Positions 295-42,582 of a DNA stretch of 64,000 nt are shown piece by piece (position 1 is the stretch's first letter; each line of letters opens with the position of its first letter). The position numbers and the translations under genes were made by a program. Location of the stretch: assembly GCA_002269645.1 (NCBI GenBank), contig NIVC01002252.1, positions 62,001-126,000 on the forward strand, read 5' to 3'. The stretch is from Macrostomum lignano. Taxonomy: Eukaryota. Under the pieces are notes generated by a model. The model did no database searches and had not been told where the DNA came from. It was given only the letters and a program-made list of their open reading frames with translations.

Positions 295-2214
295 ATGCCA
301 GAAGAAGTTGGCAGATCACTGTGGTCAGCATCAGTTCTACTTCTCTGCTTGTTCTCAGTCTGCAAGCTTAAACCGTAAGTTCAGAAAAGCTCTTTTCCCT
401 TTAACTGTTGCTGAGAAGCTCGAACGAGCGTATATTTTTTGAAAAAAAGAACATTATTCTAGTTATTTGTGATAATATTTTTGATATACGTCATAAGTTA
501 TATACGATATATGACATACATGTATTTGATATATGTCATACGTCTAGTTTATGTTTGCGCTAGTAGTTTTGATTAAGTTTATTTGAATTGCTGTGACTCT
601 TAGAATCTGACGTGCATGTAATAATCTAGCGTACGCGCTATAACAAAAAGTAGATAAATGCCACAAATTAAGTATCGAATCGTTATAAAAGTTTCAAAAA
701 ACCAACCTGCTCGTCAAAAACCTGACAGGTGCCTATCAGAGAATCATTACTGCCCAATGGCCACCGAATTTACGGTTCTGCTTGATGATTACAGCCACAG
801 AAATGCGACATTCATTCCGAGAAGTCAAGATGGAATTAACGATGGTCCTATTGTAACGGGGCGCTGCAAGTGGACCGTTAAAATCAAAGCGCCAGAAAAT
901 CAGCAAGTTTTGGTGCAAAGACTTCCCGGAATTCCAGCTAAAAATTCTATCAAGCGAAATTCTAGCCTCCTACAGAATGTACTAATCTCCAACCAAAAAG
1001 GACTCAACGACGAGATACGTAGCGCTTCATTTTCTGTGCATTCAGCGCAAAAAAGGTAAGCATGTACAAAAAACTCCTATCAAAAAATTTCCTAAATAAT
1101 TTTTGCGCATCTTTCTTGTCATAATTTAGAAGCAAGTTTGAAATTTCAATCACCTGGGAGGCGGGCAGCTTAAAATCTTACGGCGACTTAGACAATGTTA
1201 GAGTCATGCTACCAATACCTGGATACTGCAGTCGCACCATGCTGGCCTTCAATGGGAAGTGCTATGCTATGAGTGCAGTTGAACAAAATGTCACCGACGC
1301 CATGTCCAGCGTCAGGGGCGATGCTCAGCTGGCCAGCTTCTCAAGCATGACTGACATCTGCGAGTTCGTTGCAGCCAGTGAGAAAATGTTTGGTTCAAAT
1401 GTCAGAGCCGGTGTTTTATTTCATTTATTGTACACATTGAAAATAAAAAAATAACTTTTTCAGACAAAGCAAGAGCAAATGAGTATCCATACAGACGGCC
1501 TCTCCATCTGAGCCAGCGGGTCCGTCTCGGCATGTTTCTCGATTCAGCCGATGCGACAGTGCTGTCCGTGGTCAGGAGTGACAGCGGCTGCCTGCTGAAG
1601 CCTGTAGCTAACTTGGATGAATTCAGGTGAGACTCAAGCTCAATTATTGATTTACTCGCATACCCGATTGTAATAAAATGTATCTTCGAAACTTTTTCAG
1701 AGTAACTGGCGGAGTGACAGGTTCATGTCTGTCTCTCAGAGCGACCGAGTCAGACACGGTGATAGTCGAGCTCGGCGACTGCAGCAGCCCGATGCTGTCG
1801 CTACTGAGCTTCCCGGAGACTGCGCGCTCCGTGCCGAGCTCAGCGCACTGCAATGGCAGCGAGCTGATTGGCCTGATCCACCAACTGCTCAGTCCTGCTG
1901 CAAGTCTGTTCTCTGCAAGTCTGAGAATTTCTGCTGTCACGACTAGTCCAGATATTAAAGCTGCAGCCATACCATTTGAACTCATAATTGTTTCTGGGTG
2001 TGTGGGACTTCTAATTTGTGTCGCAGCCATTTTGATATACTTTTACTTGAAGCGTCGTTCTGGTCGAAATGCTCAACATTATGGAAACGGAGGACAACCG
2101 GCCACCCAAACTATGCAGGAAAACCAGTTACCACTATTGGAATCACCTCTCGAGAGACGTGAATCAAATCAAGTTGCAGAGTCTACTACAGATCGTCAAG
2201 AAAGTTTAGTGTGA
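295..2214 (+). CDS. CUB-like/CTLD-like type I membrane protein, array copy 1 (exons 295-374, 729-1055, 1130-1377, 1464-1626, 1701-2214; ~443 aa)
   Basis: All introns are GT-AG with matching phases (2,2,1,2). Signal-like MPEEVGRSLWSASVLLLCLFSVC; CUB-like RCKWTVKIKAPENQQVLVQ; CTLD-like CSRTMLAFNGKCYAMS..QLASFSS; TM LIIVSGCVGLLICVAAILIYFYL followed by KRR; ends in ESLV. Confidence 0.85.
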
Positions 2215-2633
2215 CATCGAAATTCAGTCGAAATTTGGAAAAGATACTCTCGGTACCGGTATATCAATAGAGAGTAAACAACGAAAATTGCTTTCCACTT
2301 TAACTGTTCAGTATATGAAAATTCGCATTTAGTCACATTGTGGAACAATTCTACTACCGTGCAAACGACGAAAAATAAAGGTACGTAAATAGAATGCACA
2401 GGCGACAATATTTTTAGGCAGCTATTTTTAGCTATGACAAAGTTCTATACCTATATGCGAATGTGTCATAAATATATATATAGAAATTACTAAACGCAAG
2501 CACGTACCATGTACAATGTACTTTTGTATTTTGTTCCTAAAAGAGGGTATCAAACCAATGATATAAATAAGTATCATGATGTTCTAACATCACCCTAGAA
2601 AAAATGCATCAGTGACACTCTGTATGCACTTGT

Positions 2634-4300
2634 ACCGGCAGCATTTGCTTCTTGCTACTTTAACAATACTTTTACCATTGTAAGTACCACTCAAAGAAAT
2701 AACCAAATCAAGCTTATATATGCAAGCGAAACAAGCATACTTGTCCTCATCATGCTTTTTATATTGCATCATTATTTTAGAGTCGAGTCAGCCAACCACT
2801 ACTGCGTGAACGGACAAACCCTAAGCATTGAACTGGACGATTTCTACCACCGAGACGAGACAATAATTCCTCAGGTTCTTGACGAGCCGAGGCACAAACT
2901 GATGAAGCCAAAGGACTGCAGGTGGGAGGTCCTACTGACATCCTCAAATCCAGACCTGCAGTTTGTCCTCGAAGGATTGCACAGCAATGGTAGAAGCAGA
3001 GAGATCAAAGACAAATTCGACAGTAAAAATGAAAGCGCCAGTGTTGTTATGGACTCGAGAACGCGTATTGTTGCAGGCATGTTTCAGGTGCAGCCACTGA
3101 ATAAGAGGTGAGTGCGTGAGACGCAAGAAATAAAATTTTGATCCTGATAAAAAAATTAACTGAAGTGATTCATTTATTTTAACTCTTTCAATTTCAGCAA
3201 GCACTTCTTTCTCACAGCAAGTTGGGATCCTAGAACGCAAAAGCCGCAAGCAGAAAACTTAAGAATATTGTTACCACTGCCTAGATATTGTAGTCGGGAC
3301 ATGCTCAGCTTCAATGGGAGCTGCTATGCTGTGAGCGCAGTTAAACAAAATTTGACCAAGGCCATGTCCAGCATTGGAGGCGATGCTCAGCTGGCCAGCT
3401 TCTCCAGTCTTGCTGAGATCACTGAGTTCGTTGCTGCTAGTAAGTGCGACGTGCATTAATACTCAAAGTTAATTTTAAAATGGTAAAAGCTAATCGGCAT
3501 TTCTACGAGTATAATCAACCAGACTCCCTAAATCCTTGGCTAACTTGCAGATAACAAAAAGCTGCAGGAGTTCCCGTACAGACGGCCCCTGAGCCTGGGC
3601 CAGCCGGTCCGTCTCGGCATGCTTCTCAACCGATCCAGTGCGTCCGTGATGTCTGCGGTCCGGAGTGACAGCGGCTGTCGGCTGGAGTCGGTTTCAGGCA
3701 GCGGTGAATTCGGGTAAAGTTTGGCTCTGCCATTTTTATTAATAAATGCAAATTAATAACTTGAAGAAGTGATTTTTTTAAATTTACTTTTTTTACTTTT
3801 AAATGCATTTTAGTGCTTCTGGTGACACAATAAAAGGTCCGTGCTTGTCTCTTAGGCTTACGAAGTCGAATAGAGGGGTGGTTGAGTTCAGCAACTGCAG
3901 CAGCCGGATGCTTTCGCTGCTGAGCTTCCCGGAGACTGCGCGCTCCGTGCCGAGCTCAGCGCACTGCAGCGGCAGCGAGATGGCAAATCTGATTGAGCAG
4001 CTGGCGAGCCGTCTATACAAAAATTCGTCAAGTCCAGTTCCTAATGAGGCTGCTACTCCGCCGTGGTGGGCTTTCCGCAGTTTCTCTTTTTTCTGGGTCG
4101 CTATCACCTTGTCGAGCTTAGCATTGGCAGTAGCTGTTTCGGTCTGGCGGAACTGCCGACAGCAGTCGCTGACGAAGTCAATTGACGCCGTGGAATCTGA
4201 CAAGTACTCTGACGAGTCACTAATAAATAGTGAAGAAGCTGAGCAACAGACGGTCACTCTTGCATCTGTAAACAACTCCGTGGACATGCGGATCAAATAG
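2634..4300 (+). CDS. CUB-like/CTLD-like type I membrane protein, array copy 2 (exons 2634-2689, 2781-3107, 3198-3439, 3551-3713, 3814-4300; ~424 aa)
   Basis: Same five-exon structure and phases as copy 1, with identical exon 2 (327 nt) and exon 4 (163 nt) lengths. Signal MHLYRQHLLLATLTILLPL; NHYC..CRWEV; TM FSFFWVAITLSSLALAVAVSVW. Confidence 0.85.
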
Positions 4301-5406: not shown

Positions 5407-7234
5407 ATGGCGTCGCGTTATCTTTCCCTTGTTGCCATTGCTCTGGTTTTGTCTAAGTAAGTTAAAACCTAACTGCGTTAAAAATGTTTGCTTTGATAAA
5501 TATATTTCATTACCAGTAACAAAATTACTCGTACTGTGTCCAGGTACCACTGCATCACTAAGGAGATTGAGCTAAACGACGACAAGAGAGAGTTAATAAT
5601 CAGTGTAGATTTGAGAAACCACAGACCACAGAGTTGGGAGGTGAGATTGAGCTCTAGAAGCTCCAATCAACAGGTACTGCTTGAAGGAACTGACCTCACT
5701 GACAGCGCTTATGCTGTCAGCTATTCGCTGGGAACCGACTCAAGAATAGCGACTAGTGGACTATTTCACATCTTTGCTCTCCAACAGGATTAAGTTTTGG
5801 CATAACTTTATTTAGTATACATCGATTATACCGCAGACAATGTGATTCTGTATATGCAGTATTTGACGTCAACTATTCCAGACTGAAACTGCGCATAGAG
5901 GCAAAGCTGATGCAAAGCGGCAAATGGCAAAGTTCGACCATCTTGAGACTTCAGCTGATAAACCCTGAAAAGTGCGCCGCTGACATGCTCAGTTATCGAG
6001 GCTGGTGCTATGTTGACAGTTCAGTACCGCAGAATATTACAGAAGCGATGTTGAGCATTAGAGGCAATGCTCAGCTGGCCAGCTTTTCCAGCCTGAATGA
6101 GATGCAAGAGCTCATCCGTGCTAGTGAGTTTTTAAAATACACTAATCATATATCTAAGGGCTACGAGCTACTAATACCCTGCTCATTTTCTTACAGACAA
6201 CAAGCCACTATTAACTCCTCCGTTCAAGCGACAAATCGACCTTAAGCAAGCAGCTCGTATCGGCATGTTCCGAGGCGATTCCAAGGCGCCAATAATGTCT
6301 CTAATCAATGGTGGCAGCCACTGCGAATTGCAGCCAGTTCAGCAGTACAAGGATCTCATGTGAGCATTCAATTGACGTGAAAACGTGAAGATTTTCGGCA
6401 TTACCTTTTTAACTTTTATTTCTTCTTTTTAGTGTAAACAATAAAACAAATGGTATATATTGGTCTATACGGGAGGTAACATCTGATGGCGCTGAGATGG
6501 AACTGAATGATTGCAACAGTCCAATGCCATCACTAATAAGTTTCCCACAGACAGCCAATTCTGAATCGCTGCATTTCTCCGACTGTCATAGCGACAGCAT
6601 TATTCACCTTGTTACCGAACTGGTCGGTTCTTTTGCGAACAACAGATCAACGTTGCTCACAGGCGGCACCATTCCAACCAACTATGATGATAGAAATGGC
6701 AATGGAAGTGCTCAATGGGCAAGCGGCGCTATTGGTAACTCTACGGCGGAATATAGATCGGAGAAAAATACTCTAGGATTATTGGGAACTAGCATCTTAA
6801 CTGTCATTTCTTTACTTGCACTTATTTTTGCTGTCGTCTATTGCTTTCGCAACCATTTTTGTACAAGGACACATGTTGCGTCTACTGAGAGGGAGCTGGA
6901 ATCAACGCATGATTTAAGACAGAGTGAACGAATGGAAGTTGCCCATAGGCAAAACTCCGCCCAAGATGTAGTCTCATTGGAACCGAACTCCGCCCAAGAT
7001 TTAGTCGCTTCGGAACGGAACTCCGCCCAAGATGCAGTCGCTTCGGAACGGAACTCCGCCCAAGATGCAGTCGCTTCGGAACGGAACTCCGCCCAAGATG
7101 CAGTCGCTTCGGAACGGAACTCCGCCCAAGATGTAGTCGCTTCGGAACGGAATTCCGACAAAGATTCAGTTACTTCAGAGCAGAAGAATTTCCCATTTAT
7201 TATAAACTCGAATATGCATGATGCATTGTGCTAA
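5407..7234 (+). CDS. Divergent array copy 3 (exons 5407-5456, ~5517-5789, 5882-6123, 6197-6359, 6433-7234); intron 2 donor appears mutated, so possibly a pseudogene or a truncated secreted form
   Basis: Signal MASRYLSLVAIALVLS; exons 3 and 4 have the family lengths (242 and 163 nt); TM LGLLGTSILTVISLLALIFAVVYCF. At the expected phase-2 donor the sequence is GA|TTAAGT instead of GA|GTAAGT, and read-through meets TAA at 5791. Confidence 0.7.
6950..7170 (+). repeat. 33-bp coding minisatellite (NSAQDAVASER, ~6 units) in the cytoplasmic tail of copy 3
   Basis: Direct repeats of aactccgcccaagatgcagtcgcttcggaacgg, in frame with the exon 5 ORF. Confidence 0.9.
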
Positions 7235-8343: not shown

Positions 8344-11300
8344 ATGTTCGATTATTTAAAAAAATTATCAGCAGTCCTTCTTCATGACAACCCTTTGACA
8401 TCATATATACTGCTGATCTTACTAGTGGCTTTCTTCACCCAGCTGTGAGTGATATTTGATACATATATTAAGGTCGAATGTATAGAGTAAGTGGGGTTGT
8501 AGCCTAGTGGTTAGAGCGTCGGACTCACGACTAAACGGTCGGGGGTTCGATTCTCGCTCCACTCGGAACAATTTGTGTCGCTTGAACAAGACACTTAACT
8601 CTAAATTGCTTTAGTTCACCCAGCGGTAAAATGGGTGCCAAAATTAGGGTAGGGGGGGGGTAATTGGGGGTGTGTGTGTTAGGAACCCCCCAGTCCTTGC
8701 ACTTTGGGGCTGGGTAGTCATTTATTGTGATTATTATCAATGTTATAATTATATTGCCGTCTAATTATAGTAATCGTGAGTTGGCATATGTACAGTTAGT
8801 ACTCACCTATTCATGTCTGCAGATGCCAGTCAGACAATCACCACTGCAGCCCACTGGGCCAGCACGTTCTACCACTCGACAAAAGAATGAACAAAGACGA
8901 GACTCTGATACCGGAGCTGCAGGATGTTGACAGCGTGAATCGATTCGATTACAACCGCTGCCGATGGAGATTCAAGAAGAACTCGAGACCGCAGACTGGC
9001 GTCCAGTTAGTTGTGCAAGGACTGCCTCTGGCCACTGAATTCAGCCGCTGCGTCAACAAGGCCGAAATTCAAATTAAGAGTTCGTTGGGATGGAAAAAGA
9101 AAATTGAAGCCGGATCCATTCACGTGTTTTCGCTATTTAAGAGGTACTGCTAAATTTTTGCAATCTCGTAGATACTAATGTGTTTTAAAATAGTAAATGT
9201 CATATAAGTGGTGTGAAAATCAAATATAAATTCATATATCTGTTCGCTCACTTCAGACAGTCGTTAGACATCGAAGCGTACTGGAAGGCCAACACTCCAG
9301 CAGTGGACAGATGCGCCATGAAAGTGCGAGTGCTGGTTCCGATTCAACAAGACTGCAGTCCAGACATGCTCGGATTTCGTGGCAACTGCTTCGCCCTGAG
9401 CACACAGAAACAAAATTTAACAGACGCAATGTCCAACATCGGAGGCGATGCTCAGCTGGCCAGCTTCTCCAGCATGGCTGAGGTATCCGAGTTCATCGCG
9501 GCAAGTGAGTAATATGATGATTTAAACAAAATTGCAACAATATAAAATTACTGCAATTTGCATATAATTATTGCTTATGTACACTGGTTTAAGACACAGC
9601 CAGGCAGCACAAGTACCCACACGAGAGGCCTCTGAGCCTGGGTCAACCGGTCCGTCTCGGCATGTTTCTCAACGCATCCGCTGCTGAAGTTCTGTCACTG
9701 GTCAGGAGTGACAGCAGCTGTCAGATGCAGCCTGTTGCGAAGCTGTCCAATTTTTCGTAAGTTTTGTGTTCTCGTAGCGTCATTTCGTTACAAACCAGTT
9801 TGATTGGCCTTCATAAGCACTTTATAAAATCGCTGTAAATTTCAGAGCGACTGGCATAGTGACAGGTCCGTGCTTGACACTGAGGGTGAATAAGTCCGAC
9901 GCAGCGGTGATCGAGTTCGGTGACTGCAGCAGCCCGATGCTGTCGCTGCTGAGCTTCCCGGAGACTGCGCGCTCCGTGCCGAGCTCAGCAGTGCACTGCA
10001 GCGGCAGCGAGCTGGCGACTCTTCTGGATCGGCTTCAGAGTCGCTTTGCGGATGCCGAGTCCAGTCCAGAGTTTTCTGCTCAAGGGAAAAATAATTCGGC
10101 TAGAGAAGGAAATGAGTTATTTTTCCAGAAGAATCAGGATTTTATCTATCCCGCCATTATCGTTGGCGCACTGCTGCTGATTGCTGTCTTTGTGGTGATG
10201 GCGTTCGCGATGAAGCTTCGACGGCGTCGCAAGCTGAAATACCTGCTGAATTACGAACCCCAAGAATCTAAACAGCTACGAGTAGATCACACGCAAATTG
10301 CTGAGCCACCAAAAAATTTTGGGAATTATGCTGATGATTACGTGGCCAGTACGTTGTATCAATTGTCATGAAGTCTTTGTTTCAAGTCCTGTTCTCTGAA
10401 TGAAGTCTTTGTTCAAGCCCGATGTCTCACAATTTCAGAGCGACACCCTCAAGCTGACGACATCACAGCGCCTGCTCTGCACACCTCGTCCAGCATTGAC
10501 AGCCTGGACCTGCTGGCCGCAGCCAAACGGCCGCAGCTTCGTCAGCAAGAGGTCCCCAGCAGTTTGTCATCCACAGCAGACCTTTACTTGGCCGCCAGGC
10601 TGGCCGGGGATGAGAGCAGCGAAGATTTCTCAGATTTGGTGCCGAATTCGTCGGACAGGTTCGGACACTCCGATTCCGAGTCTTTGTCCTCCTCTCTGTT
10701 GGACTCAGCTGTTGGTGGCGCCTCTGGAGAGGTGAGTTGGTTTCTGGCTTCATCTGCGAGTCTGTTTGCCACTCTGTCTCACTCTAAACCTCTGCCTACC
10801 TGTCTATCTCACCCTTTATTTCACTGTCTACCTCTCTGTCTCATACTATACCTCAACTTCTACTTTTCTATCTCACCCTGTTTCCTTGTCTACCTGTATT
10901 TCATCTTGCGCACCTGTCTACATATACCTCTCTAATCTATGTGTTAAGCTGCTGATGAAAAGATTTGACCCACACGTTTATTTATAAATCCTGCTGGAAA
11001 AAGACGACAGCTCGCAGCACTTTAACTACGCGTTCCCTGTCTGATGAATAACCTTTATTAGTACCTCTGAATTAGTTTTAGATAAGGTATATTTATTTAC
11101 GAGCTACAAATTTTATGTTAATGCTGTTAGCTAGATTAGCAATCCAGTTCGTATAATTATTTCCCTTAATCCCTTGCATTTCGCACCTGCAGCCCATTAG
11201 CAATAGTCAATCGGCATCCAACGTTAGCCGCACCAAACAAACGGAGCAGCAGCAACGGAATGAGAAGCCTGATGACTCACGAGAGGATCGGAGCGAGCTG

Positions 11301-13427: not shown

Positions 13428-13570
13428 GTCCAGTCGGTCAATCACTACTGCGTGAACGGGCAAACCTAAAGAATTAAAATGGATGACATCTATCATCGAG
13501 ACGCGATAATGAGGTTCATCAGGTCCAGGACGAGCCGATCAGGCACAAGCTGCACAAACCGTTAAACCGC
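13428..13570 (+). pseudogene. Relic exon 2 of the CUB-CTLD family (copy 2-like)
   Basis: VQSVNHYCVNGQT*RIKMDDIYHRD aligns to copy 2 ESANHYCVNGQTLSIELDDFYHRD, with an in-frame TAA and a frameshift; no downstream exons. Confidence 0.75.
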
Positions 13571-14495: not shown

Positions 14496-14538
14496 AAAAA
14501 TGCTCTTTCAAGCAGATTCTGTTTAAGTAGGGACCAGA

Positions 14539-15312: not shown

Positions 15313-15450
15313 ATTAATAATAATAGTAATAATAACAGTAATTGATTATGGGCTGCAACCGACATCTCTGAAGGCTGCGTACGGCTGTTCAGTCCAGGGA
15401 CTGGGGGGTTGCCACACACACACCCTCAATTACCCCTGCCCACCACCCTT
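15312..15450 (-). mobile_element. 3' part of a SINE related to 8492-8750
   Basis: Reverse complement gggtaattgagggtgtgtgtgtggcaacccccagtccctggac matches 8658-8702, followed by an (att)n tail. Confidence 0.55.
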
Positions 15451-16576: not shown

Positions 16577-18581
16577 ATGGTAAGCTACATTGTCAGTGTC
16601 AATATTTAAACATATTATAAGTAAAATTATTGAAAATCTGAGCCATAGAAACACAAATATACAACTGATGTCTAACATCCATCTGAATAAAATCTCCAAG
16701 ACTAAACTGCAACGAAAATTCCCTAAAATTTTAGATTTCAGCACATCTGTGGCTTTTATTGACTGTAGTCTTCATGACGTTTTATCCGTAAGTGAATTTT
16801 CATGCAACTTATAAAATCTTTTAAACTAACACAGTTTTATTTCCTTTTCGAGTACAAAAAACGAAATAAAAACAAAGCTTGCAACAAATAATTTTGTAAC
16901 CCAGTTCCGCCGAAGAAAACCACTACTGCCTCCATGGAGAGTCGGTCACAGTTCAAATAGACGACTATTATAACCGAGACGAGACCATCGTTCCCATGAT
17001 TCTGGGCGAGTCAACTAAAGGCCAGCGTAAGCCCAAGCAATGCAGGTGGGACATCAGACTGAAGACAGCGAAACCAGGCATGCAACTTGTGATTGCAGCG
17101 GTGCCCAGCAAGAAAGACCGATCGACTGCTGCCGATGGGAAAGCCAGAATGTCGGTCGATTACTTGAACCGCAATTTCATCATCGTTACGACCGGCATGT
17201 TTCAAGTTCTACCAGCGACAGAGCAGTGAGTACAGCTCAAGTTGATGCTGTTTTTCACGTTGAATCGTTGAATTCGATGAATCAAAGAAAACTTGGTGAC
17301 TTCATTTCAGTCAGCGCTTCACAGTCGACCTCAGCTGGGATCCAGGGATGCAGAAACCGGGCTTCGACAACCTGAGGATATTGCTGCCGATTCCGGGACA
17401 GTGCGGCCGAGACATGCTGTGGTTCAGTGGCAGCTGCTATGCTGTCAGTGCAGTGCGGCAGAGTATGGCTGACGCTACGGATAGCGTTGGAGGCGATGCT
17501 CAGCTGGCCAGCTTCTCCAGCATGGCTGAGATCAGCGAGTTCATCGCTGCCAGTGAGTTATCAGTAGTTGTGTTTGTAGCTCGTAACAGAACTGAACTCA
17601 ATTAGGCAACTAAAACACTCGCGTCTCTTGCATTGCAGACACGGCAAGGCAGAATGAGTTTCCCTACCGAAGTCCTCTGAGCCTGCGCCAGCCAGTCCGT
17701 CTCGGCATGTTTCTGAACGCATCCGCTGCCACCGTGCTGACCGCCGTCAGAGGTGACAGCGGCTGCGTGCTGAAGTCTGAAAAGCTCGCAAACATTACGT
17801 AAGCTGTTGAATTTGTACACAGCTTGAACTCATCAAAAGACATCAGAAGACATCAAACTATTTTCTTGTACAGTGGACAATATTTCTTCACTCTTTCAAT
17901 TCGATTCATTTCAAGTCCGACGTGCTTTTCAGAGCGACTGGCCGAGGGAAAGGTCCGTGCCTCTCTCTCAGAGTGACTGAGTCCGATAAAGCAGTGGTCG
18001 AGTTCGGCGACTGCGGCAGCCCGATGCTGTCGCTGCTGAGCTTCCCGGAGACTGCGCGCTCCGTGCCGAGCTCAGCAGCGCACTGCAAGGGCAGCGAGCT
18101 GGCGACTCTTCTGGATCGGCTTCAGAGTCGCTTTGCGGATGCCGAGTCCAGTCTAGCGTTTTCTGCTCAAGGGAAAAATAATTCGGCTAGAGAAGGAAAT
18201 GAGTCATTTTTCCAGAAAAATCAGGCTTTTATCTATCCTGCCATTATCGTTAGTGCACTGTTGCTGATTGCTGTCTTTGTGCTGCTGGCAGTCGCGATGA
18301 AGCGTCGACGGCGACAGCGTTCTCAGCCGAACGCATCAAATTCTGAGTCTGTTGTCCTTCCTCTATCTGGTGTCCACCGTTCAGCCTCCACTCGCTCCGA
18401 TCGCCACGAGAAGGGCACAAAGGGAAGCAACTCGGTCGGCGCATCGTTAGAAGATGATCACTGGAAGGTCGCTACGGAAAAACTACTTTCCAATGGTAAT
18501 CAACCTCTGTTAGATGGTCCGCCAAGTTTAACTCGTGAATCGCAGACTCTGGGTGTCATTGATTTGAACCTTGCTGTATGA
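16577..18581 (+). CDS. Array copy 5 (exons ..16577-16579 ATG only, 16735-16787, 16905-17225, 17311-17552, 17639-17798, 17933-18581; ~475 aa); chimeric
   Basis: M|ISAHLWLLLTVVFMTFYP|SAEENHYC; phases consistent; TM FIYPAIIVSALLLIAVFVLLAVAM followed by KRRRRQR. Confidence 0.85.
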
Positions 18582-19681
18582 TTTGTAAAGTCACATGAGT
18601 GTGCATGTTTTGGTTTTGCACCAAGCCTGCTCTGTAAACTTTTATGTAAATAACTCAAGTATGTGATAAAATTATATCCAGATTCCCACAGTTTTAATGC
18701 GTTTCTCTCATTCGAGTATTTCAATGGATTTTCTATCAATGGTCGCATTCATAATTGGTTGTTTCAGCCAGAGTTTTCTGTACATACTCACCTCTTGACA
18801 TGCTTGATTTGAAAAGAATTTTAAGTACACACATCTACCCATGTGTCTTACTATGAATTTCGGATATAATATATTAATATAACTTTCTATGACAGCTCAC
18901 TGCTGATGTTTGAATTCATTTTCTTCAGAGGGATTCTTGAGAGATAGAAAAGTACATGTACGGCTCGTATAATGGACAGGTCAGCTCCGTCACGGAAATT
19001 CATGTAGAAAAAGGCACGGTGGGAGTGCAGTCTAAAGGGATTTTCATTCTAACCTTGCATTGCAATCTTAATACAGGTGTAGCTTAGGTCGAACGAATTC
19101 AAACCTCATATCTGGAAAGTTTTTTTTTCAGAACAGCTGCTTAGAAAACAACAAAAGTGGATACGGCAGAAAGATTTGAAGCTATTTTCAACTTTTCTGC
19201 CACTGAGTACACATGCTGTATGCCGCCGGCAAGTATTAAATGCGGTGTGCACATCGTGCGCAACACAATATCGTACTAACTCTGTAGCAGTGTACTCTAC
19301 GTTTTCATAACACTTTTCTGTGGATCTTTTTTATAAATAAAGTATATATGATGACGGTTCAATACCTTGTTAATAGGAAGCAAACCAAATCTCAAGCCTG
19401 AGAATGCCTGAACAAGGTACTACCTATAGGCACAGGCTTAACCCGTGAGCATTATTGAATCCGATCTCACTGATTAAGCAATTGCTATTTGATATTTTAC
19501 AGCCCTTTTACGGAAAATGTGTCATTCTGTGAGCTGGTTTTCGGCCATAGGCATGCTTAGTTCACTGCTCTCGATGTAAGTGCAGCATCTCAACTGTTAA
19601 AATTTATCAATGTACTAGAACTGGCTAATGTATCAATCACTATGATAAGTTAATCTTTCTGTCCCACTTTTGCAGAAAATA

Positions 19682-19817
19682 TACTCAGCAGCAGTCAAAA
19701 GCTCCACCTGTACAAATCACGCGTAGTTAGATAGAAAACTTCTCATTTAAAACGCACGGTAAAAGGTCAGTAAAATATCTTTGATTGATGGTTGGAACTT
19801 TTGACTGTTGTTGAGTA
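19682..19817. mobile_element. MITE-like element A (TIRs ~27 bp, TA-flanked)
   Basis: Left end tactcagcagcagtcaaaagctcc; right end reverse complement tactcaacaacagtcaaaagttcc; TA on both sides. Confidence 0.6.
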
Positions 19818-19819
19818 TA

Positions 19820-20094
19820 TACTCAGCAACATTGAAAAGTCGCCACTCTATGCGCCAGTGAGCAATTTCTCTTGGACTATTCTGAAATAAAAGACACGAG
19901 AAAACTGAGTAGTAGCTTTAATCCGTCCAACCTTCGCACACCGCTCCCCCCACTTCATTCCTCAACCAAAGTCTGCCGCGTGGCATAGCTGAGTTGCGTC
20001 ACTCGCAAAGATTGAGAGACTTTACCTGCACTCTCGAAAGTGGCGACCACAGACGGAAAATTCTGGGATGGCGAATTTTCGATGTTGCTGAGTG
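19820..20094. mobile_element. MITE-like element B (TIRs ~26 bp, TA-flanked)
   Basis: Left end tactcagcaacattgaaaagtcgcca; right end reverse complement cactcagcaacatcgaaaattcgcca; TA on both sides, consistent with a Tc1/mariner-type TSD. Confidence 0.65.
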
Positions 20095-21186
20095 TATATT
20101 CAGCCCGTTGTCTCACGCGTTTTCCGCTGCTGAAATTAAGGCTGCTACCCTAAAAGTGCATAAATAATGTAGGCCTGAGTTTTTAAGTCGTTGCCGCTAA
20201 ATTCTTTTCAAAGGATATTTTACAGAAATACTGCAACCGGCAGCTACTGAATCAGCATCTCAAAAAGAGAACTTACTCTAAACAGTTGACATGCGCGCGG
20301 CCTATCAAATTATCGTAGCTAGATTCCGTGTATATACCGTCGTTTGAGTTGGACTTCTAATGGACTTTTGGGGATGCTTGTGAGCAATCTAAAACCAGAC
20401 ATGAGGCTCAAGTTTTAATAGTACATTTATGTAGTGGCTTGCTTTTAATACTTCTTTATCGGAAACTCTCGTTTTGAGAAACTACGAGCACTTTGAGAAG
20501 TAGAGAAGATCGAGCTTGCCTGTTAGCCGAATATATCGGAATTGCACTTGTAAAATGATGAGAGAAAAGCTGCGTTATACGAGCTGGAAAGGCTAAAAGG
20601 CTTAAAATCTCACGCTTTAAACCGATCTCACAGATTATCATCCAATGTTAAAGGACCGATATAAGGAGTATATACGAGCTATGTAAGGGTGAATGTATAT
20701 AAATTTGAAATAATAAATTAAAAAGGGAACCATATAATAACAAAATACTTGGCAATTCGTGTTGTCGCTTGTAAGTCGTTACCACACACCAAGTTTCAGC
20801 AAATATGCACTTTACATTACCTTGCTCATGGTACGAATAATCATTTGGAACTCAGCAAATTACTGTATTACAGTGACAGATGGCCTTGGAGCAATCCAAA
20901 TTGAGAAAATTTTGAGTAGATATTAAGTCGATGGTTTTTCAGACCATCAGCAGTCTAAACAGAATCTGGTAGCTAAAAATATTTTTAAAGTCTTCAAATT
21001 TCTTTAATCACCTAGTTGCATACTTTATCGAATATTTAAACTGACTGATTTTGTACATTTTGGCAGTAACTAATCCTCTTTCGTTACTCAGGTATTAATG
21101 GCCACACCTGAAAAGATCCTAAGGTTATATTTTGACGATTGTCTGGAAGGCTTTGACGATAAGATGCAGTCAATTTGAGTGCATAG

Positions 21187-23253
21187 CTTTGGCGCAGGTC
21201 CTCTGTTGTTTTCTTCCTGTGTATTTGCCTTTATGTGCCGTATTCGAGTCAAGTGGCAAGTTTTCCCTTAGCTGTGTGAGGCATGGTTGTTCAATAATGT
21301 TGCGAGCTCGAATTTCGCAACTGAGCATGATCGTGCTCAGGATTAGGATCATGTTTCAGGTGTAAAAAATGGAACGTACTCAACGCATTGGCTTCGTATA
21401 TGCATTCCAAAAATTTCGCAGCGAATCACTATTGCATACGGGACCATACGTCAAATCGACTAATTGATGAGTTCTACAACCGGGACGAGTTGCTCATACC
21501 ACGCGTTCTTGGCACGTCCTCTCAGGGCCAGTTCCAAATAAAATGCAGGTGGGACATCAGATTGAAGACAGAGAAGCCCGGCATGCAACTCGTGATTGCA
21601 GCGATGCCCAACAAGAACAACCGATCAACAACTACAGATGAGGAGGTCAAAATGTCGGTCGACTTCATAAACAGCAATTTCGTCAGCGTTACGACCGGCA
21701 TGTTTCAAGTTCTACCAGCGGCAGAGCAGTGAGTACAGCTCAAGCTGATGCTGATTGTCTCGTTAGCGTTCCATGAATCAAGGAAAACTTGGCGATTTCA
21801 TTTTAAGTCGGCGCTTCACCGTCGACCTCAACTGGGATGCACGAGTGCAGAAACGGAGCTCCGACAACCTGAGGATATTGCTGCCGATTCAGGGACAGTG
21901 CGGCCGAGACATGCTGTGGTTCAGTGGCAGCTGCTATGCTGTCAGTGCAGTGCGGCAGAGTATGGCAGACGCTACGGATAGCGTTGGAGGCGATGCTCAG
22001 CTGGCCAGCTTCTCCAGCATGGCTGAGATCAGCGAGTTCATCGCTGCTAGTGAGTCATTATGAGCTGTCTTCGTTGGACTCGCTTTTAAGTACGTACGAG
22101 CCGCCTCAAGCACACAAATCCCATCTCATTGAATTGCAGACACGGAAAGGCAGAAAGAGTTTCCCTACCGACGGCCTCTGAGTCTGAAACAGCCGGTTCG
22201 CCTCGTCATGTTCCACAATGCATCAGCTGCTGCCGTGTTGTCCGCGGTCAGGAGTGACAGCGGCTGCCTTCTGCAGCTTGTGTCGAATTCGTTTAACTTT
22301 TCGTAAGGCTTTGAGTCTGTTGGAATTTTGTTTTGGTTGCGTTTTAATTTCACTTCTGTTTGTCTCCATCTTGTGTGCATGACAAAGTGTGGAACCAGTC
22401 CGAAAATTGGTGGCCCTCGGCGCTCGCTGATAGGCTGGACCTATTCGTTGTCACCTTCGATTGTTTGTGTTCGAATTTCTCTTGGCCCTTTATCACTTAA
22501 GCCGTCCAAACACGCTGTTGATTTATCCAAATCCAAATCCGATATCCAAATCTTTTACACAGTCAGAATTTCGGTTTGGATTCGGGATTTACGTCAGGGA
22601 CATCATGCTGGCTCATGCAGAATCTTGATCTAGTATGAGCCAAATAAAGCGCATGAATTGCAGCACGATATTAAAATATTTCCAGACTGACTGGCCGAGA
22701 GAGAGGTCCATGCCTGTCTCTAAGGGTGACTGACGAAGACTCAGCGGTGGTCAAGTTCGTGAACTGCAGCAGCCCGATGCTGTCGCTGCTGAGCTTCCCG
22801 GAGACTGCGCTCTCTGTACCGAGTTCAGCGCACTGCAGCGGCAGCGAGCTCATGAAGCTGGTTCAACTGAAGCTGAGCTACCAAGTCAGCACAACTCTGA
22901 GCCCTAGCCAGATTCATTCTCGGATAACTCGGATAGCGGTTCTCTGTTCCGTTGGCTTGGGTGTCCCCTTGCTGATTGGCGTCCTTGTCGGCTTGTCGTG
23001 CGTGCTATACCGGCGACGAAGGAGTTTCGATATCCGAGGAAACAATCCGGAAGAAGACCAACAACAAGACCCTGCAAGGGCCGTTTCAGCAATCTCAGAT
23101 AACAATCCGGTAAGACAGCGAAACCCAATAATGTCCGGGTTCAGACGTCTGCCTTCATTCCGTCAAAGTCGCCGAGAAAGAGGGGACCGTGGAATTGCAT
23201 TAGCGGAACAAAATGGAAACGCAGCGCTTGACCCCAACGCTAATAAACCATAA
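21187..23253 (+). CDS. Array copy 6 (5' exons uncertain; exon 2 ends 21728; then 21808-22049, 22140-22302, 22686-23253)
   Basis: NHYC..KCRWDIRLK; exons of 242 and 163 nt; TM IAVLCSVGLGVPLLIGVLVGLSCVLY followed by RRRR. A candidate signal exon LWRRSSVVFFLCICLYVP lies at 21187-21239, but the start codon is unresolved. Confidence 0.75.
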
Positions 23254-24650
23254 TCGTCTTTGCGGCATTCAGATATTTAATATTCGAATTGAATAAGGAT
23301 ATTAAACATGAATAAAGCTATAATAATATAACTGATCGCACTTACTGAAGCTAATATATAAATTAACCTTCCCAATTTATACATTTTGGGTGATTACTGC
23401 ATATCGTTGAACTGTTTACTTAATATGCTTGAATTGCCAAAGCTTGTGATAGACAAAGTCAATGTTTAAAACTCGATCGTACATGTATTGAATATTTTTA
23501 TGGTGCAACACTTCGACACAAATGTTTACAATGATTTTAAAAATAACATTTACAGCTATTTACTTTCTGCACCACGATGCTTTGGAGTTGCTTAATGAGC
23601 GTGCGAGTATGCAGTTTATTTTTTGGGTAAATGTTTAGTTCTAAATACATTTAAAAGTATTCGCTAATGCCCTCTGACCCCTCTCTTCTTGTTTTTATAT
23701 TTATACTGCGTATAGCTATATATTACATATCTAACATTTCTAATGTAAGCATGCAGTTTTTTATTTTGTATTAGCTTTTGCTGAAAGCAATACCTCCTAG
23801 TTTTCCGAAACTTGCCGCCCGTTGTCTTGAAGAGCTTATAACTGGCTGACAATGTCTACAAATTATGACTTTTTCGCTTTTTTAATTGATTTTACTCTAG
23901 CCTTTACAGACTTCTATTCAGATCATTACTGATTCTTGGCAGTGTATATTTTTGTTTTTGAGATTTTAGCTGACAGTTATTACCGGTTATTAAGCTTATT
24001 ATTCGAATTAAGAATTCAAATTACTGATGCGCTTTAATTTTCAGTTATGTATTTTGAGGTCTTACTTTTATAAACCAAATAAACCTCACTGGAGTAAATG
24101 TGTATCACTACATAAGCTACACATTAGCTAACATTATAGTACATTAAATCTGGAGTCAAATTTTTACATTTGCATGAAAGCTTTCATGCCAAATTGAACC
24201 CTAGCTACAGATTTTGTACGCGTTTGGCGAACGCTGCTTTGTACAGTACGTGTAGAGTTATTTTTGGACCAGATAAAGGGGAACTTTGATTCAATGCAAG
24301 CGTCCCCCGTGTTCAGGTGTACATTGCAGTGTACATGTTTCTAAAAATAGAAAGCGAAAACACAAAAATATACTTGACTCTAAATGTTCCGTATTAGAAT
24401 GTTTTAATGCGTCATGATTTAATGCAAAGTTCCTACCTTGATTGACTGAAATATCTTAGCTAAAAAGGCTGCAAATTCAAAGAATCTTTCAGGAATCTAC
24501 TCGGTAGTTATCAAAAGAAAAAAAAGAAATTTTGCTTCTAACTAACGCTTTCCTGGTGAGCAACCTATTTGAAGCAGATTTTCATGCTTCATTGGCACTA
24601 GCTGCGAGGAAAATATCAATATAATCCAGCCTATATGTTTTGCATTTCAG

Positions 24651-26259
24651 ATGCGTGTTCTACCGTGGCATCTACTAATACTCGAACTTACATGTCCTCG
24701 AAGGAGTGTCCAGCAGCGAAGGAACTGACAGTTCAGCCTCGGCTAACCAAACAGAGATACCGCTAGAGATTATGGGAATCGATGCTCATGCTTACCAGCA
24801 TGTTGACGCTGGCACGTTGCGTGTGATCTCGCTGAATAAAATGTAAGAATTTCCTTTGGTAAAACACAGATGGGCGCGTTTTCACCCGGTTCTTGCATTA
24901 TTACCAAATTTGCTGTTACCTTCTCGTCACGCCCTAACAGGGAGTTCTTCTCCGTCAGAGCGAACTATAATCCTAGGAAGCAAAAAATGCAGCTGAAAAA
25001 GCTAAGGATTGCTATGCCACTTCCCACAGTCTGCAGTCGAGGCATGCTCGGCTTCAACGGCAGCTGCTACGCTTTGAGTGCGGTCAGACAGAATTTAACA
25101 GCCGCAATGTCCAGCATCAGAGGCGATGCTCAGCTGGCCAGCTTCTCCAGCATGTCTGAGATCAGCGAGTTCATCGCTGCCAGTGAGTTGAGGTGATTGC
25201 TATACTCAGCAACAGCTAAGCCTCCTCTGTGGAGCAGTGTGATAATGTTGAGCATTAGTGATTTATCTGTCACAAGAGTTCATTGATCAGGATCTTAGCC
25301 ATGGGAAGGGAGAGGGGGTCCGCGCACGTCCTTCACACGTCCTTGACTTACGTGTCACCTTAAGTACAGCTCAACCAAGTGCAATCAACTCTGACTTAGC
25401 TTAATCCAATATAAAACTTAATGAAAATTATATTTATATCCATTCGGATATTCCAGACAAAGCAAATCTGAATGAGTTCCCCTACAGGCGGCCCCTGAGC
25501 CTGGGCCAGCCGGTCCGTCTCGGCATGTTTATCAACGCAGCCGATGTCCAAGTGCTGTCCTTAGTCAGAACTGATACCGGCTGTCAGCTGCTACCTGTAG
25601 CTGACTTTGATGAATTCCAGTGAGATTCAAACTCAAGTAAGGTTTATTGATGTATTCAATTGTAATAAAGTACTATTGGGTGACTTTTCAGAGTGACTGG
25701 CAGAGTGACAGGTCCGTGCCTGTCTCTGAGAGTGGCCGCATCAAGCAGAGCGGTGGTCGAGTTCAGCAACTGCAGCAGCCCGATGCTGTCGCTGCTGAGC
25801 TTCCCGGAGACTCCCAGTTCATTGCTGTGCTTTGAGCACTGCAACATTACCGACACTGTGACCAATGAACCGATCCAGTTTGAGATGTCGACTCCTCAGT
25901 ACGCATCTGAGTACGCGATGAATGCTCTGAATTGGAGCACCAGCGCTAATGACACAGTGGCATATTTTGATGGCGACTCAGCGCTTGGTGTTGACTTTCG
26001 ATACCTTATCTTCATCCTAATAGGAGTGAGCTGCATTAGCACGACTTTATGGCTACTATCTAAATTGTGTCAGTCAGCAGCAAACCAGTCTGACTATTTT
26101 CTAACAGTCAGAGCATTAACCTGTAGTGCCAAAGTTTTATTATTTAATAAAAGTACAATCAAGGTGACAATATTCAGATTTTGTGTTAGAATTCCATTTA
26201 TTAGTGCATATTTTAATTTTGATTTTTATGTATCAAGCAAACAGTTTGTATTGGCATAA
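24651..26259 (+). pseudogene. Array copy 7, 5'-degenerate (24651-24842, 24941-25182, 25457-25619, 25692-..); probable pseudogene or N-terminally truncated gene
   Basis: Exons 3-5 are intact, with family lengths and TM FRYLIFILIGVSCISTTLWLL. The CUB exon lacks the NHYC half and has TAA at 24676 in the frame of the downstream donor; no convincing signal exon was found. Confidence 0.6.

Positions 26260-27001: not shown

Positions 27002-42582
<15,581 letters not shown>

What the first reader, a model, noticed from the sequence alone, without database searches (positions are those of the whole stretch)
295..26259. Tandem cluster of about 10 CUB-like + atypical C-type-lectin-like receptors: candidate immune, allorecognition or cell-surface recognition locus
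Seen: seven colinear + strand genes share intron phases (2,2,1,2) and exon lengths (exon 3 242/248 nt, exon 4 160/163 nt), plus three relics. Each encodes a signal peptide, an NH[YH]C..C.W module, a C..[DT]ML.F.G.CY..QLASFSS..RLGMF..CL.LR..C module, a stalk, a TM helix and a tail. Established: CxWxIxAP-like strands mark CUB folds; CxxxW-F-G-CY..A..LAS and a late C..C pair mark CTLDs. These copies lack the helix-1 Cys of the outer disulfide and the EPN/QPD and WND motifs, so they are probably not Ca2+/sugar-binding lectins. Inference: dense duplication, rapid ectodomain divergence and birth-and-death are typical of recognition receptors (nematode CUB-CTLD clec genes, NK-complex CTLDs, Hydractinia Alr). 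I cannot assign this architecture to a named family.
Basis: partly seen in the sequence, partly recalled or inferred. Interest (0 to 1): 0.85.

Follow-up and report, generated by a model that had tools for sequence, protein, structure and literature searches.

The report
Flatworm-specific CUB plus lectin-like receptor cluster
This stretch of the flatworm Macrostomum lignano genome holds a tandem array of membrane-protein genes, found so far only in this species, whose outer part is predicted to fold as a CUB-like domain followed by an atypical, probably non-sugar-binding C-type lectin-like domain; what they bind and do is untested.

Summary
Window 295-26259 carries seven co-linear + strand paralogues with the stated exon lengths (exon 3 242/248 nt, exon 4 160/163 nt) and intron phases (2,2,1,2), plus three relics.

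The source is Macrostomum lignano: a UniRef protein is 98-99% identical.

The domain reading is supported.
- AlphaFold2 models of close paralogues give CUB domains as top PDB matches for the exon-2 domain (E 2e-4, TM about 0.5-0.57).
- Only C-type lectin-like domains (CTLDs) match the exon 3-5 module (134 hits at E<=1e-3, TM 0.52-0.68).
- A family profile hits only CTLD sequences in the PDB (best E 6.5e-6).
- Pfam detects neither domain.
- The helix-1 Cys, the strand-5 Cys, and the EPN/QPD and WND motifs are absent.

Corrections:
- Only g1, g2 and g4 are evidently intact.
- g3 has a TT splice donor and g6 an AA acceptor.
- No exon 1 was found for g5, and g7 is 5'-truncated.
- The CUB domain, stalk and tail diverge fast; the CTLD is conserved and partly homogenised by gene conversion.
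- dN/dS is below 1 in every exon.

All relatives whose source was checked, out of 1.84 billion representatives searched, are M. lignano proteins. An immune or allorecognition role is untested. This is a new variant of a known kind, of moderate interest.

The parts
295..2214 (+). g1: intact 5-exon gene of 443 aa. Signal peptide, CUB-like domain (exon 2, 729-1055), CTLD (exons 3-5), stalk, TM helix (aa 367-389) and a Ser/acidic tail.
   Evidence: splicing, phases 2,2,1,2; HMM hits E 4e-18 to 3e-40; TM helix, N-glycosylation sequons.
2624..4300 (+). g2: intact 5-exon gene of 424 aa with the same architecture. UniRef A0A1I8IAB5 (P0010) equals its exons 1-3 plus a read-through.
5407..7234 (+). g3: the most divergent copy (500 aa if spliced). 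The intron-2 donor is TT rather than GT, the C.W cysteine is lost, and the tail carries 6.6 copies of a 33-bp coding repeat (6953-7170). Probably defective.
   Evidence: P0006 is identical to its C-terminal part.
8344..10371 (+). g4: intact 5-exon gene of 452 aa. Intron 1 holds a tRNA-like, SINE-like fragment.
13413..13541 (+). Relic: an exon-2-like fragment (..SVNHYC..).
   Evidence: P0001 residues 522-563, 45% identity, E 2e-6; weak.
14374..14501 (+). Relic: an exon-2-like fragment with a frameshift (NHYC in one frame, ..YYNRDATIVP.. in another).
   Evidence: weak HMM hits; the sequence as read.
14821..15315 (-). Relic: an inverted duplicate of g4. Exon 2 (89% identical to 8836-9134) is joined directly to the start of exon 5 (84% identical to 9830-10014). 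Exons 3-4 are deleted.
16905..18581 (+). g5: exons 2-5 are intact (456 aa from exon 2). No signal-peptide exon was found upstream. UniRef A0A1I8I910 (P0004) is 98-99% identical.
19517..23253 (+). g6: exon 1 at 19517-19575 (MCHSVSWFSAIGMLSSLLS), a 1.8-kb intron, then exons 2-5 from 21422. The in-frame acceptor position (before 21411) reads AA instead of AG. Using the AG before 21422 causes a frameshift.
   Evidence: P0009 is identical to exons 2-3.
24694..26259 (+). g7: a 5'-truncated copy. Only the second half of exon 2 remains (about 24694-24845). Exons 3-5 are intact. The tail reads into low-complexity sequence.

Best explanation
The region is a Macrostomum lignano tandem array of paralogous type I membrane glycoprotein genes. 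The family has so far been detected only in this species.

Each intact gene encodes, in order:
- a signal peptide (exon 1);
- a membrane-distal CUB-like beta-sandwich, held by one disulfide (NHYC ... C.W), encoded by exon 2 plus the start of exon 3;
- a long-form C-type lectin-like domain (exons 3-5);
- a short helical stalk, one TM helix and a poorly conserved Ser/acidic-rich cytoplasmic tail.

The CTLD keeps the N-terminal hairpin cysteines, a WIGL-like VRLGMF strand and cysteines at the positions of the inner pair. It has lost both cysteines of the canonical outer disulfide and both Ca2+/sugar motifs.

Most likely mechanism (inferred). The proteins act as Ca2+-independent cell-surface binding receptors for protein or other non-sugar ligands. 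The conserved CTLD would supply a common binding or oligomerisation module. The fast-diverging CUB domain would supply copy-specific specificity. No conserved signalling motif is evident in the tails.

The array evolves by tandem duplication, inversion or deletion (relics, damaged copies) and exon-scale gene conversion, under overall purifying selection. Which process the receptors serve (defence, mating or gamete recognition, or adhesion) is not shown.
For: Organism: P0004 is 98-99% identical to window 16996-17799. P0009, P0010 and P0006 are exact products of g6, g2 and g3.

Architecture: the spliced models carry a signal peptide, a TM helix and N-glycosylation sequons.

CUB:
- The AF2 model of paralogue P0007 has block-mean pLDDT of 52-86, mostly 76-86, across the N-terminal domain.
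- The 17 best Foldseek PDB matches all contain CUB domains (neuropilin a1, Neto2, PCPE-1, meteorin, spermadhesin). E is 2e-4 to 2e-3, and TM normalised to single-CUB targets is 0.43-0.57.
- C6, C44 and W46 of the N-domain alignment are invariant or nearly so. Distant paralogues retain a second Cys pair and an F.SD-like strand.
- Thirteen members in two independent proteomes carry UniProt's automatic name 'CUB domain-containing protein'.

CTLD:
- The AF2 model of P0002 residues 41-256 is 89-92% identical to g5 in exons 3-5. It has pLDDT 79 and pTM 0.77.
- Foldseek gives 134 hits at E<=1e-3, and the top 50 are all CTLDs (LOX-1, NKR-P1B, langerin, mincle, CD69, Ly49G), TM 0.52-0.68.
- The family profile against PDB sequences gives 58 hits, all CTLDs, best E 6.5e-6.
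- In those alignments the helix-1 Cys column aligns with Ser. No EPN/QPD or WND motif occurs in any member.

Evolution:
- Per-exon identity is 23-40% for the CUB domain and 45-72% for the CTLD, apart from g3 and the near-identical g5/g6 and g4/g5 exons.
- dN/dS is 0.16-0.70.
- dS forms a mosaic. For g5/g6 it is 0.08 in exon 3 against 0.72-0.79 in exons 2 and 4. For g4/g5 it is 0.17 in the first part of exon 5 against 0.9-1.9 in exons 2-4.
- Relics are documented.

Lineage restriction: the exhaustive profile search of 1.84e9 representatives gave 47 hits. Every family member whose source was checked is from M. lignano.

Transcription: distant members come from the RNA-seq-derived GenBank annotation of assembly Mlig_3_7 (PMC5730564). 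They also sit in tandem pairs with the same exon plan.
Against: - Pfam finds neither CUB nor Lectin_C in any member, even at E 10.
- Profiles of the N-domain alone hit nothing in PDB sequences. The CUB assignment therefore rests on a medium-confidence model with TM about 0.5, plus automatic names.
- Disulfide pairings could not be checked, since no coordinates were available.
- There is no expression evidence for the window's own copies. They appear only in the earlier UniProt proteome (A0A1I8 accessions), not in the RNA-seq-based one.
- Four of the seven copies have defects.
- Ligand, cell type and function are entirely inferred.
Confidence: 0.6

Rival explanations
1. The window's array is mostly a decaying, non-functional pseudogene cluster left over from a family whose functional members lie elsewhere in the genome.
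For: - g3 has a TT splice donor, and g6 has AA at the in-frame acceptor.
- No exon 1 was found for g5, and g7 is 5'-truncated.
- There are three further relics.
- This subfamily is absent from the RNA-seq-derived GenBank annotation and present only in the earlier UniProt proteome with A0A1I8 accessions.
Against: - g1, g2 and g4 are complete, with canonical splice sites and open frames of 424-452 codons.
- All exons of all pairs show dN/dS of 0.16-0.70, and the cysteines and core motifs are invariant.
- The GenBank annotation excluded transcripts that overlap repeat annotations (PMC5730564), so absence from it is weak evidence.
- Single-base defects could be errors in a long-read assembly.
Confidence: 0.2
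2. The proteins are genuine Ca2+-dependent carbohydrate-binding C-type lectins that act as pattern-recognition receptors for microbial glycans.
For: The CTLD fold is present, and many top structural matches are sugar-binding CRDs such as langerin, mincle, DC-SIGN and dectin-2. Invertebrate CTLD expansions are often linked to immunity (general knowledge).
Against: - No EPN/QPD tripeptide and no WND motif occurs in any of about 40 members. The corresponding strand reads EFGDC, EFSNC or KFTC.
- The equally good matches to non-lectin CTLDs (CD69, LOX-1, NKR-P1B, Ly49G, type II antifreeze protein) show that the fold does not imply sugar binding.
Confidence: 0.07
3. The N-terminal domain is not a CUB homologue but an unrelated or convergent beta-sandwich. 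Only the CTLD belongs to a known superfamily.
For: - There is no sequence-level match to CUB in Pfam or in PDB sequences.
- TM is only about 0.5 with rmsd about 5 A.
- Other jelly-rolls (PP2 lectin, cupins, the C-terminal domain of Clostridium perfringens enterotoxin) appear lower in the same list.
- The window's copies have only one of the two CUB disulfides.
Against: - The 17 best structural matches all contain CUB domains, at probability 0.69-1.00.
- The Cys ... C.W spacing fits the first CUB disulfide, and distant paralogues keep a second Cys pair at the CUB-like position.
- The recurrent automatic name 'CUB domain-containing protein' appears on members from two proteomes, whereas the other odd names occur at most twice.
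Confidence: 0.15
4. The family serves reproduction (sperm-egg, sperm-female-tract or mate recognition) rather than immunity.
For: Macrostomum-specific genes are over-represented among germline genes: 48.5-54% against 35-44.5% overall (PMC5816591). From general knowledge, spermadhesins are CUB proteins, and reproductive proteins often form fast-evolving lineage-specific families.
Against: There are no expression data for these genes, and dN/dS below 1 gives no sign of sexual-conflict-type positive selection at exon scale.
Confidence: 0.2

Closest known systems
Non-lectin C-type lectin-like domains of receptors such as CD69, LOX-1, NKR-P1 and Ly49 (vertebrate NK-complex type)
   Same: The predicted fold is the same (TM 0.53-0.66). 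The sequence motif C..W..F.g.CY.fS...A.LA is shared. Both lack the Ca2+/sugar motifs and presumably bind protein ligands. Both occur as tandem multigene clusters.
   Different: Those receptors are type II membrane proteins with no CUB domain, and they keep the canonical C1-C4 disulfide. Here the orientation is type I, a CUB-like domain precedes the CTLD, and both C1 and C4 are lost. No orthology was found: no vertebrate NK receptor appears among the profile hits.
Type I single-CTLD membrane proteins (layilin, chondrolectin, CD302); comparison from general knowledge
   Same: Both have a signal peptide, an extracellular CTLD, a single TM helix and a short cytoplasmic tail.
   Different: Those proteins are conserved single-copy genes, lack a CUB domain and are recognised by Pfam Lectin_C. 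The flatworm family is a lineage-specific expansion that Pfam does not recognise.
Nematode clec genes that combine CUB and CTLD domains; comparison from general knowledge
   Same: Both combine CUB and CTLD domains in lineage-specific, tandemly duplicated families that are often discussed as immune effectors.
   Different: The nematode proteins are mostly secreted, often have several domains, and Pfam detects their domains. No nematode protein was recovered by the exhaustive profile search. The resemblance is therefore one of architecture, not demonstrated common descent of the gene family.
CUB-domain co-receptors (neuropilin a1/a2, Neto2, PCPE-1)
   Same: They are the best structural matches of the N-terminal domain, and their CUB domains serve as protein-binding modules in a membrane-protein ectodomain.
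   Different: There is no sequence-level similarity. The window's copies carry only one CUB disulfide. Whether the acidic Ca2+ site of ligand-binding CUBs is present was not examined.

Membership tests
C-type lectin-like domain (CTLD) superfamily | Characteristic alpha/beta double-loop fold (beta0-beta1-alpha1-alpha2-beta2...beta5) | tested here: met
   AF2 model m94077cad3d7c has pLDDT 79 and pTM 0.77, with secondary-structure order b-a-a-b-b-b-b-b-b. Foldseek against the PDB gives 134 hits at E<=1e-3, and the top 50 are all CTLDs, TM 0.52-0.68. The model is of paralogue P0002, which is 89-92% identical to g5 across these exons.
C-type lectin-like domain (CTLD) superfamily | Sequence-profile similarity to known CTLDs | tested here: met
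   The family profile A5 against PDB sequences gives 58 hits, all CTLDs, best E 6.5e-6 (DC-SIGNR, CD69), covering beta0 to alpha2. With the shallower profile A2 all 15 hits were CTLDs at E 0.03-1. In the other direction, Pfam Lectin_C does not reach E 10 on any member.
C-type lectin-like domain (CTLD) superfamily | WIGL motif in strand beta2 | tested here: met
   VR[LI]G[ML]F is conserved in the window's copies, and the distant paralogues P0050 and P0057 read KVWTGYF and KLWTGAY. The assignment is by position in the alignment and model, not by a scored motif.
C-type lectin-like domain (CTLD) superfamily | Canonical outer disulfide C1 (helix 1) to C4 (strand 5) | tested here: not met
   The C1 column of DC-SIGNR and CD69 aligns with Ser (..AMSS-I..). 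The strand-5 position reads LLSFPE, with no Cys. Two other invariant cysteines (g2 C251 and C314) may replace this disulfide, but the pairing is not verifiable here.
C-type lectin-like domain (CTLD) superfamily | Inner disulfide C2-C3 and the long-form N-terminal hairpin disulfide | tested here: inconclusive
   Cysteines are present at the expected positions: g2 C159/C170 for the hairpin and C273/C291 for the inner pair. C159, C170 and C291 are invariant; g3 lacks a Cys at the C273 position. No model coordinates were available to confirm the bonding.
Ca2+-dependent carbohydrate-recognition domains (true C-type lectins) | EPN or QPD tripeptide and WND motif forming Ca2+ site 2 | tested here: not met
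   Neither motif occurs in any window copy or in about 25 further members. The corresponding segment is ..G.C.SLR...VEF(G/S)(D/N)C...
CUB domain | About 110-residue beta-sandwich (jelly-roll) fold | tested here: met
   AF2 model me701c9632b60 has block-mean pLDDT of 52-86, mostly 76-86, over residues 1-120. The 17 best Foldseek PDB matches all contain CUB domains, E 2e-4 to 2e-3, TM to single-CUB targets 0.43-0.57, rmsd about 5 A. Support is moderate in strength.
CUB domain | Sequence-profile match (Pfam PF00431 or PROSITE) | tested here: not met
   Pfam CUB is not found at E 10 in 16 N-domains or in full-length members. The N-domain profiles A6 and A7 hit nothing in PDB sequences. The only positive sequence-level signal is the source's own automatic name 'CUB domain-containing protein' on 13 members.
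CUB domain | Two conserved disulfides (C1-C2 near the C.W.I strand; C3-C4 mid-domain) | tested here: inconclusive
   The first pair is present as a pattern: NHYC, then 32-40 residues, then C.W. C6 and W46 are invariant and C44 nearly so. The second pair is absent from the window's copies but present in distant paralogues (P0018, P0029, P0050, P0057, P0058).
NK-complex CTLD receptors | Type II membrane orientation with an N-terminal cytoplasmic tail (ITIM, or a charged TM residue) | tested here: not met
   The window's proteins have an N-terminal signal peptide and a C-terminal TM helix followed by a basic stop-transfer stretch, so they are type I. No ITIM or ITAM consensus is shared by the tails, as read from the sequences.
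Nematode CUB-CTLD clec family | Detectable common descent (sequence relatedness) with nematode clec proteins | tested here: not met
   The exhaustive hmmsearch of 1.84e9 representatives returned 47 hits. Every family member whose source was looked up is from M. lignano. The remainder are bacterial Ig-repeat proteins (spurious) and one classical CTLD fragment, P0053.

The most novel reading that the evidence does not exclude
The family could be a flatworm-specific self/non-self or mate-recognition receptor system. The hypervariable membrane-distal CUB domain would be the specificity determinant. A conserved, disulfide-rewired, Ca2+-independent CTLD, kept uniform by gene conversion, would be the common signalling or oligomerisation module. 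That would make it a recognition-receptor design that arose independently of vertebrate NK receptors and cnidarian Alr.
Probability: 0.12. Interest if true: 0.75.

Novelty: new variant of a known kind. Interest (0 to 1): 0.4.

Why it matters
Flatworm innate immunity and cell-surface recognition are poorly charted, and M. lignano is a transgenic model in which such genes can be tested. The family shows how far CTLD and CUB sequences can drift and still keep their fold: Pfam no longer detects them, and the canonical outer disulfide is gone. It also offers a compact case of exon-wise gene conversion alongside birth-and-death in a receptor array.

Some perspective is needed. Lineage-specific expansions of CTLD and CUB proteins are common in invertebrates. 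In addition, 35-45% of M. lignano genes are Macrostomum-specific (PMC5816591). The existence of such a cluster is therefore not in itself surprising.

Tried and rejected
I therefore used paralogues from UniRef, with single-exon translations as extra alignment rows.
- The first fragment alignment, A3, misplaced three exon-2 pieces and was discarded.
- Pfam scans of single members found nothing relevant.
- N-domain-only profiles against PDB sequences gave no hits.
- Hits of the family profile to bacterial Big_6 Ig-repeat proteins (P0040, P0049, P0054) were judged spurious matches driven by their repeats.
- Searches for a g5 exon 1, by ORF and donor scan, by tblastn with paralogue exon-1 peptides and by blastn with the g6 upstream region, all failed.
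- ARAGORN and Rfam do not recognise the tRNA-like element in g4 intron 1.
- Literature searches found no paper describing this family.
- Hydractinia Alr was considered and rejected as a relative. From general knowledge it is built of Ig-like domains, and nothing here is Ig-like.
- A processed-retrocopy origin for the minus-strand relic was rejected, because it retains 16 nt of intron 4.

Full report
**Source and nature of the sequence.** The window is eukaryotic: about 43% G+C, with GT-AG introns. A search with the spliced product of the first gene returned only Macrostomum lignano proteins. One of them, UniRef A0A1I8I910 (P0004), is 98-99% identical to window 16996-17799. Three others (P0009, P0010, P0006) are exact partial products of the window's genes g6, g2 and g3. 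The window is therefore from the free-living flatworm M. lignano.

**Checking the observation.** I spliced the first gene by eye and confirmed an open frame of 443 codons with intron phases 2,2,1,2. tblastn with this protein and with the M. lignano homologues located six further + strand copies and several fragments. Hand-built models give exon 3 lengths of 248, 242, 242, 248, 242, 242, 242 nt. Exon 4 is 163 nt in every copy except g5, where it is 160. The alignment shows invariant cysteines and the quoted motifs.

A family HMM run on the six-frame translation finds every exon at E 1e-18 to 1e-47 and nothing beyond 26.3 kb. It also finds three relics:
- 13413-13541 (+), an exon-2-like fragment.
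- 14374-14501 (+), an exon-2-like fragment with a frameshift.
- 14821-15315 (-), which blastn shows to be an inverted copy of g4 exon 2 (89% identity) fused to g4 exon 5 (84% identity), with exons 3-4 deleted.

**How many copies are intact.** Only g1, g2 and g4 have everything: a signal-peptide exon, canonical splice sites, a TM helix and a tail. The other four have problems:
- g3 has TT instead of GT at the intron-2 donor, and it lacks the C.W cysteine.
- g6 has a paralogue-like exon 1 at 19517-19575 (E 6e-6 against the exon 1 of P0005). The position where an acceptor would restore the frame reads AA. The only AG nearby causes a frameshift into stop codons after 15 codons.
- For g5 no exon 1 could be found.
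- g7 lacks exon 1 and the first half of exon 2.
Some of these defects could be assembly errors. Together with the relics, they fit a birth-and-death array.

**What the domains are: sequence evidence.** Pfam recognises nothing in any member, even at E 10. A profile of the window's ectodomains searched against PDB sequences returned 15 weak hits, all of them C-type lectin-like domains. With a deeper profile that includes distant paralogues, this rose to 58 hits, again all CTLDs. The best is E 6.5e-6 (DC-SIGNR/CLEC4M, CD69, DC-SIGN, BDCA-2, type II antifreeze protein). The alignments run from the first Cys through C..W.F.G.CY.S and the A.LA strand into helix 2. In these alignments the canonical helix-1 cysteine aligns with Ser.

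**What the domains are: structural evidence.** The tools would not accept spliced window proteins, so I modelled paralogues, adding the window's exon translations as alignment rows.
- Model 1 covers P0007, the whole ectodomain. Its pLDDT is 66 overall; block means run 71-86 over residues 1-200 apart from dips to 52-62 near residues 31-40 and 71-90, and the second half of the CTLD is poor. Its 17 best PDB matches all contain CUB domains: neuropilin-1/2 a1, Neto2, PCPE-1, meteorin, MAP-1 and spermadhesin. E is 2e-4 to 2e-3, and TM normalised to single-CUB targets is 0.43-0.57.
- Model 2 covers residues 41-256 of P0002, which is 89-92% identical to g5 in exons 3-5. Its pLDDT is 79 and pTM 0.77, with a b-a-a-b6 core followed by a C-terminal helix. 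It gave 134 PDB hits at E<=1e-3. The top 50 are all CTLDs (LOX-1, NKR-P1B, CEL-I, Reg3a, langerin, mincle, CLEC5A, dectin-2, CD69, Ly49G and others), TM 0.52-0.68.
The CTLD assignment is thus secure by both fold and sequence.

**How firm the CUB assignment is.** It rests on a medium-confidence model plus three weaker lines:
- The Cys...C.W pattern is conserved.
- Distant paralogues retain a second Cys pair and an F.SD-like strand.
- UniProt's automatic name 'CUB domain-containing protein' recurs on 13 members from two independent proteomes. The other automatic names (PilZ, VASt, ZP and so on) occur at most twice and look like noise.
N-domain profiles alone find no PDB sequence.

**Atypical features of the CTLD.**
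- The N-terminal hairpin cysteines (g2 C159/C170) are present, and so are cysteines at the inner-pair positions (C273/C291).
- Both partners of the canonical outer disulfide are missing: Ser replaces the helix-1 Cys, and the strand-5 position reads LLSFPE.
- Two other invariant cysteines (C251 and C314) may substitute for that disulfide. This is an inference, because no coordinates were available.
- The WIGL strand reads VRLGMF in the window's copies and KVWTGYF in distant paralogues.
- No EPN/QPD or WND motif exists in any member, so Ca2+-dependent sugar binding is unlikely.

**Family distribution.** A word-indexed search of 5.8e9 proteins with the alignment found 18 proteins, all from M. lignano. 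An exhaustive hmmsearch of 1.84e9 cluster representatives found 47 hits at E<=1e-3. Every family member whose source was looked up is from M. lignano. The other hits are bacterial Big_6 repeat proteins, judged spurious, and one classical CTLD fragment, P0053, which has a sub-threshold Pfam Lectin_C match.

Distant members (PAA accessions) belong to the GenBank annotation of assembly Mlig_3_7. That annotation was derived from a genome-guided RNA-seq transcriptome (PMC5730564), so at least those members are transcribed. Their loci show the same exon plan and also tandem pairs (L001, L003, L004). The window's own subfamily appears only in the earlier UniProt proteome with A0A1I8 accessions. This is weak evidence for low expression, because the GenBank set excluded transcripts that overlap repeats.

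**Evolutionary pattern.**
- Per-exon identity among the window's copies is 23-40% for the CUB exon (61% for g5/g6). It is 45-72% for the CTLD exons, apart from g3 and the near-identical g5/g6 and g4/g5 exons, and 19-37% for the stalk, TM and tail (62% for g4/g5).
- Nei-Gojobori dN/dS is 0.16-0.70 for every exon of every pair tested. Selection has therefore been purifying overall, and there is no exon-scale signature of positive selection.
- dS is strikingly mosaic. For g5/g6 it is 0.08 in exon 3 against 0.72-0.79 in exons 2 and 4. For g4/g5 it is 0.17 in the first part of exon 5 against 0.9-1.9 in exons 2-4. This indicates exon-scale gene conversion or recombination between neighbours.
'Rapid ectodomain divergence' is therefore true of the CUB domain and the stalk, but not of the CTLD.

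**Likely mechanism.** What is shown or predicted: type I topology, many N-glycosylation sequons in the ectodomain, a CUB-like fold, a CTLD fold, and loss of the lectin motifs. What is inferred: these are Ca2+-independent binding receptors. Their conserved CTLD would provide a common interaction or oligomerisation surface. A predicted helix directly follows the CTLD and could act as a neck. The variable CUB domain would give each copy its specificity. The tails are Ser/acidic-rich with a basic juxtamembrane stretch and share no ITIM, ITAM or endocytic consensus. Signalling, if any, would therefore need a partner. Nothing here discriminates between defence, reproduction and adhesion.

**Comparison with known systems.**
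- By fold and lost motifs, the CTLD works like the non-lectin CTLDs of CD69, LOX-1 and NK receptors. Those are type II proteins, have no CUB domain and keep the outer disulfide, so this is not a member of that group.
- By topology it resembles layilin, chondrolectin and CD302 (general knowledge). Those are conserved single-copy genes that Pfam detects.
- By domain combination it resembles nematode CUB-CTLD clec genes (general knowledge). No sequence relationship was found.
- No paper describing the family was found.
I class it as a new variant of a known kind.

**Verdict.** The domain interpretation is supported: strongly for the CTLD, moderately for the CUB domain. The functional label is untested, and several details need correction. 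Interest is moderate. Lineage-specific CTLD and CUB expansions are common in invertebrates, and 35-45% of M. lignano genes are Macrostomum-specific (PMC5816591). Even so, the disulfide-rewired CTLD, the variable-CUB and conserved-CTLD split, and the experimental tractability of the organism make the family worth a follow-up.

Noticed in passing
window 46595-51627 (- strand): An alpha-kinase (eEF2-kinase-like) gene lies here. The ORF at 49658-50125 matches Pfam Alpha_kinase at E 4.5e-44, and the ORF at 51193-51627 matches at E 3.2e-10. A probable further exon at 46595-47104 resembles, by eye, the SEL1-like C-terminal repeats of eEF2 kinase; Pfam found nothing in it. Its introns are filled with tandem arrays.
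   Followed up: partly
window 26681-63769: The right-hand 37 kb is dominated by some 20 distinct micro- and minisatellite arrays. The largest, at 31859-40729, is a 39-mer repeated 228 times at 99% identity. Another, at 59250-62775, is a 45-mer repeated 78 times with a 364-bp higher-order period. The receptor cluster ends where this repeat-rich block begins.
   Followed up: partly
window 8490-8575 (g4 intron 1) and 15391-15449 (-): A tRNA-like sequence with A-box and B-box-like motifs is followed by a G-rich tail. Part of the element recurs in inverted orientation next to the minus-strand relic (83% identity over 60 nt). ARAGORN and Rfam do not call it, so it is probably a tRNA-derived SINE fragment.
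   Followed up: partly
window 6953-7170: The cytoplasmic tail of g3 contains 6.6 copies of an in-frame 33-bp repeat that encodes NSAQDAVASER (92% matches).
   Followed up: no
window 17311-17552 vs 21808-22049; 9846-10031 vs 17933-18118: Synonymous divergence is mosaic from exon to exon between neighbouring paralogues. For g5/g6, dS is 0.08 in exon 3 against 0.7-0.8 in the flanking exons. For g4/g5, dS is 0.17 in the first part of exon 5 against 0.9-1.9 upstream. This points to recent gene conversion.
   Followed up: yes
L001 10809-21024; L003 3436-12771; L004 6213-21247: Distant members of the same family in the GenBank Mlig_3_7 assembly also lie in head-to-tail pairs with the same four-part exon plan. 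L002 holds a single copy within 10 kb on either side.
   Followed up: partly
proteins P0021/P0065/P0066, P0006/P0063/P0064, P0001: Each window gene has two or three near-identical (>90%) counterparts in the UniRef M. lignano proteome. P0001 is a mis-fused model spanning three tandem genes of a parallel cluster. Both fit the duplicated large chromosome reported for the DV1 line (PMC5730564). In the g4 counterpart P0021, about a dozen of the roughly 13 differences, by eye, fall in the signal peptide and the first 85 or so residues (first half of the CUB domain).
   Followed up: partly
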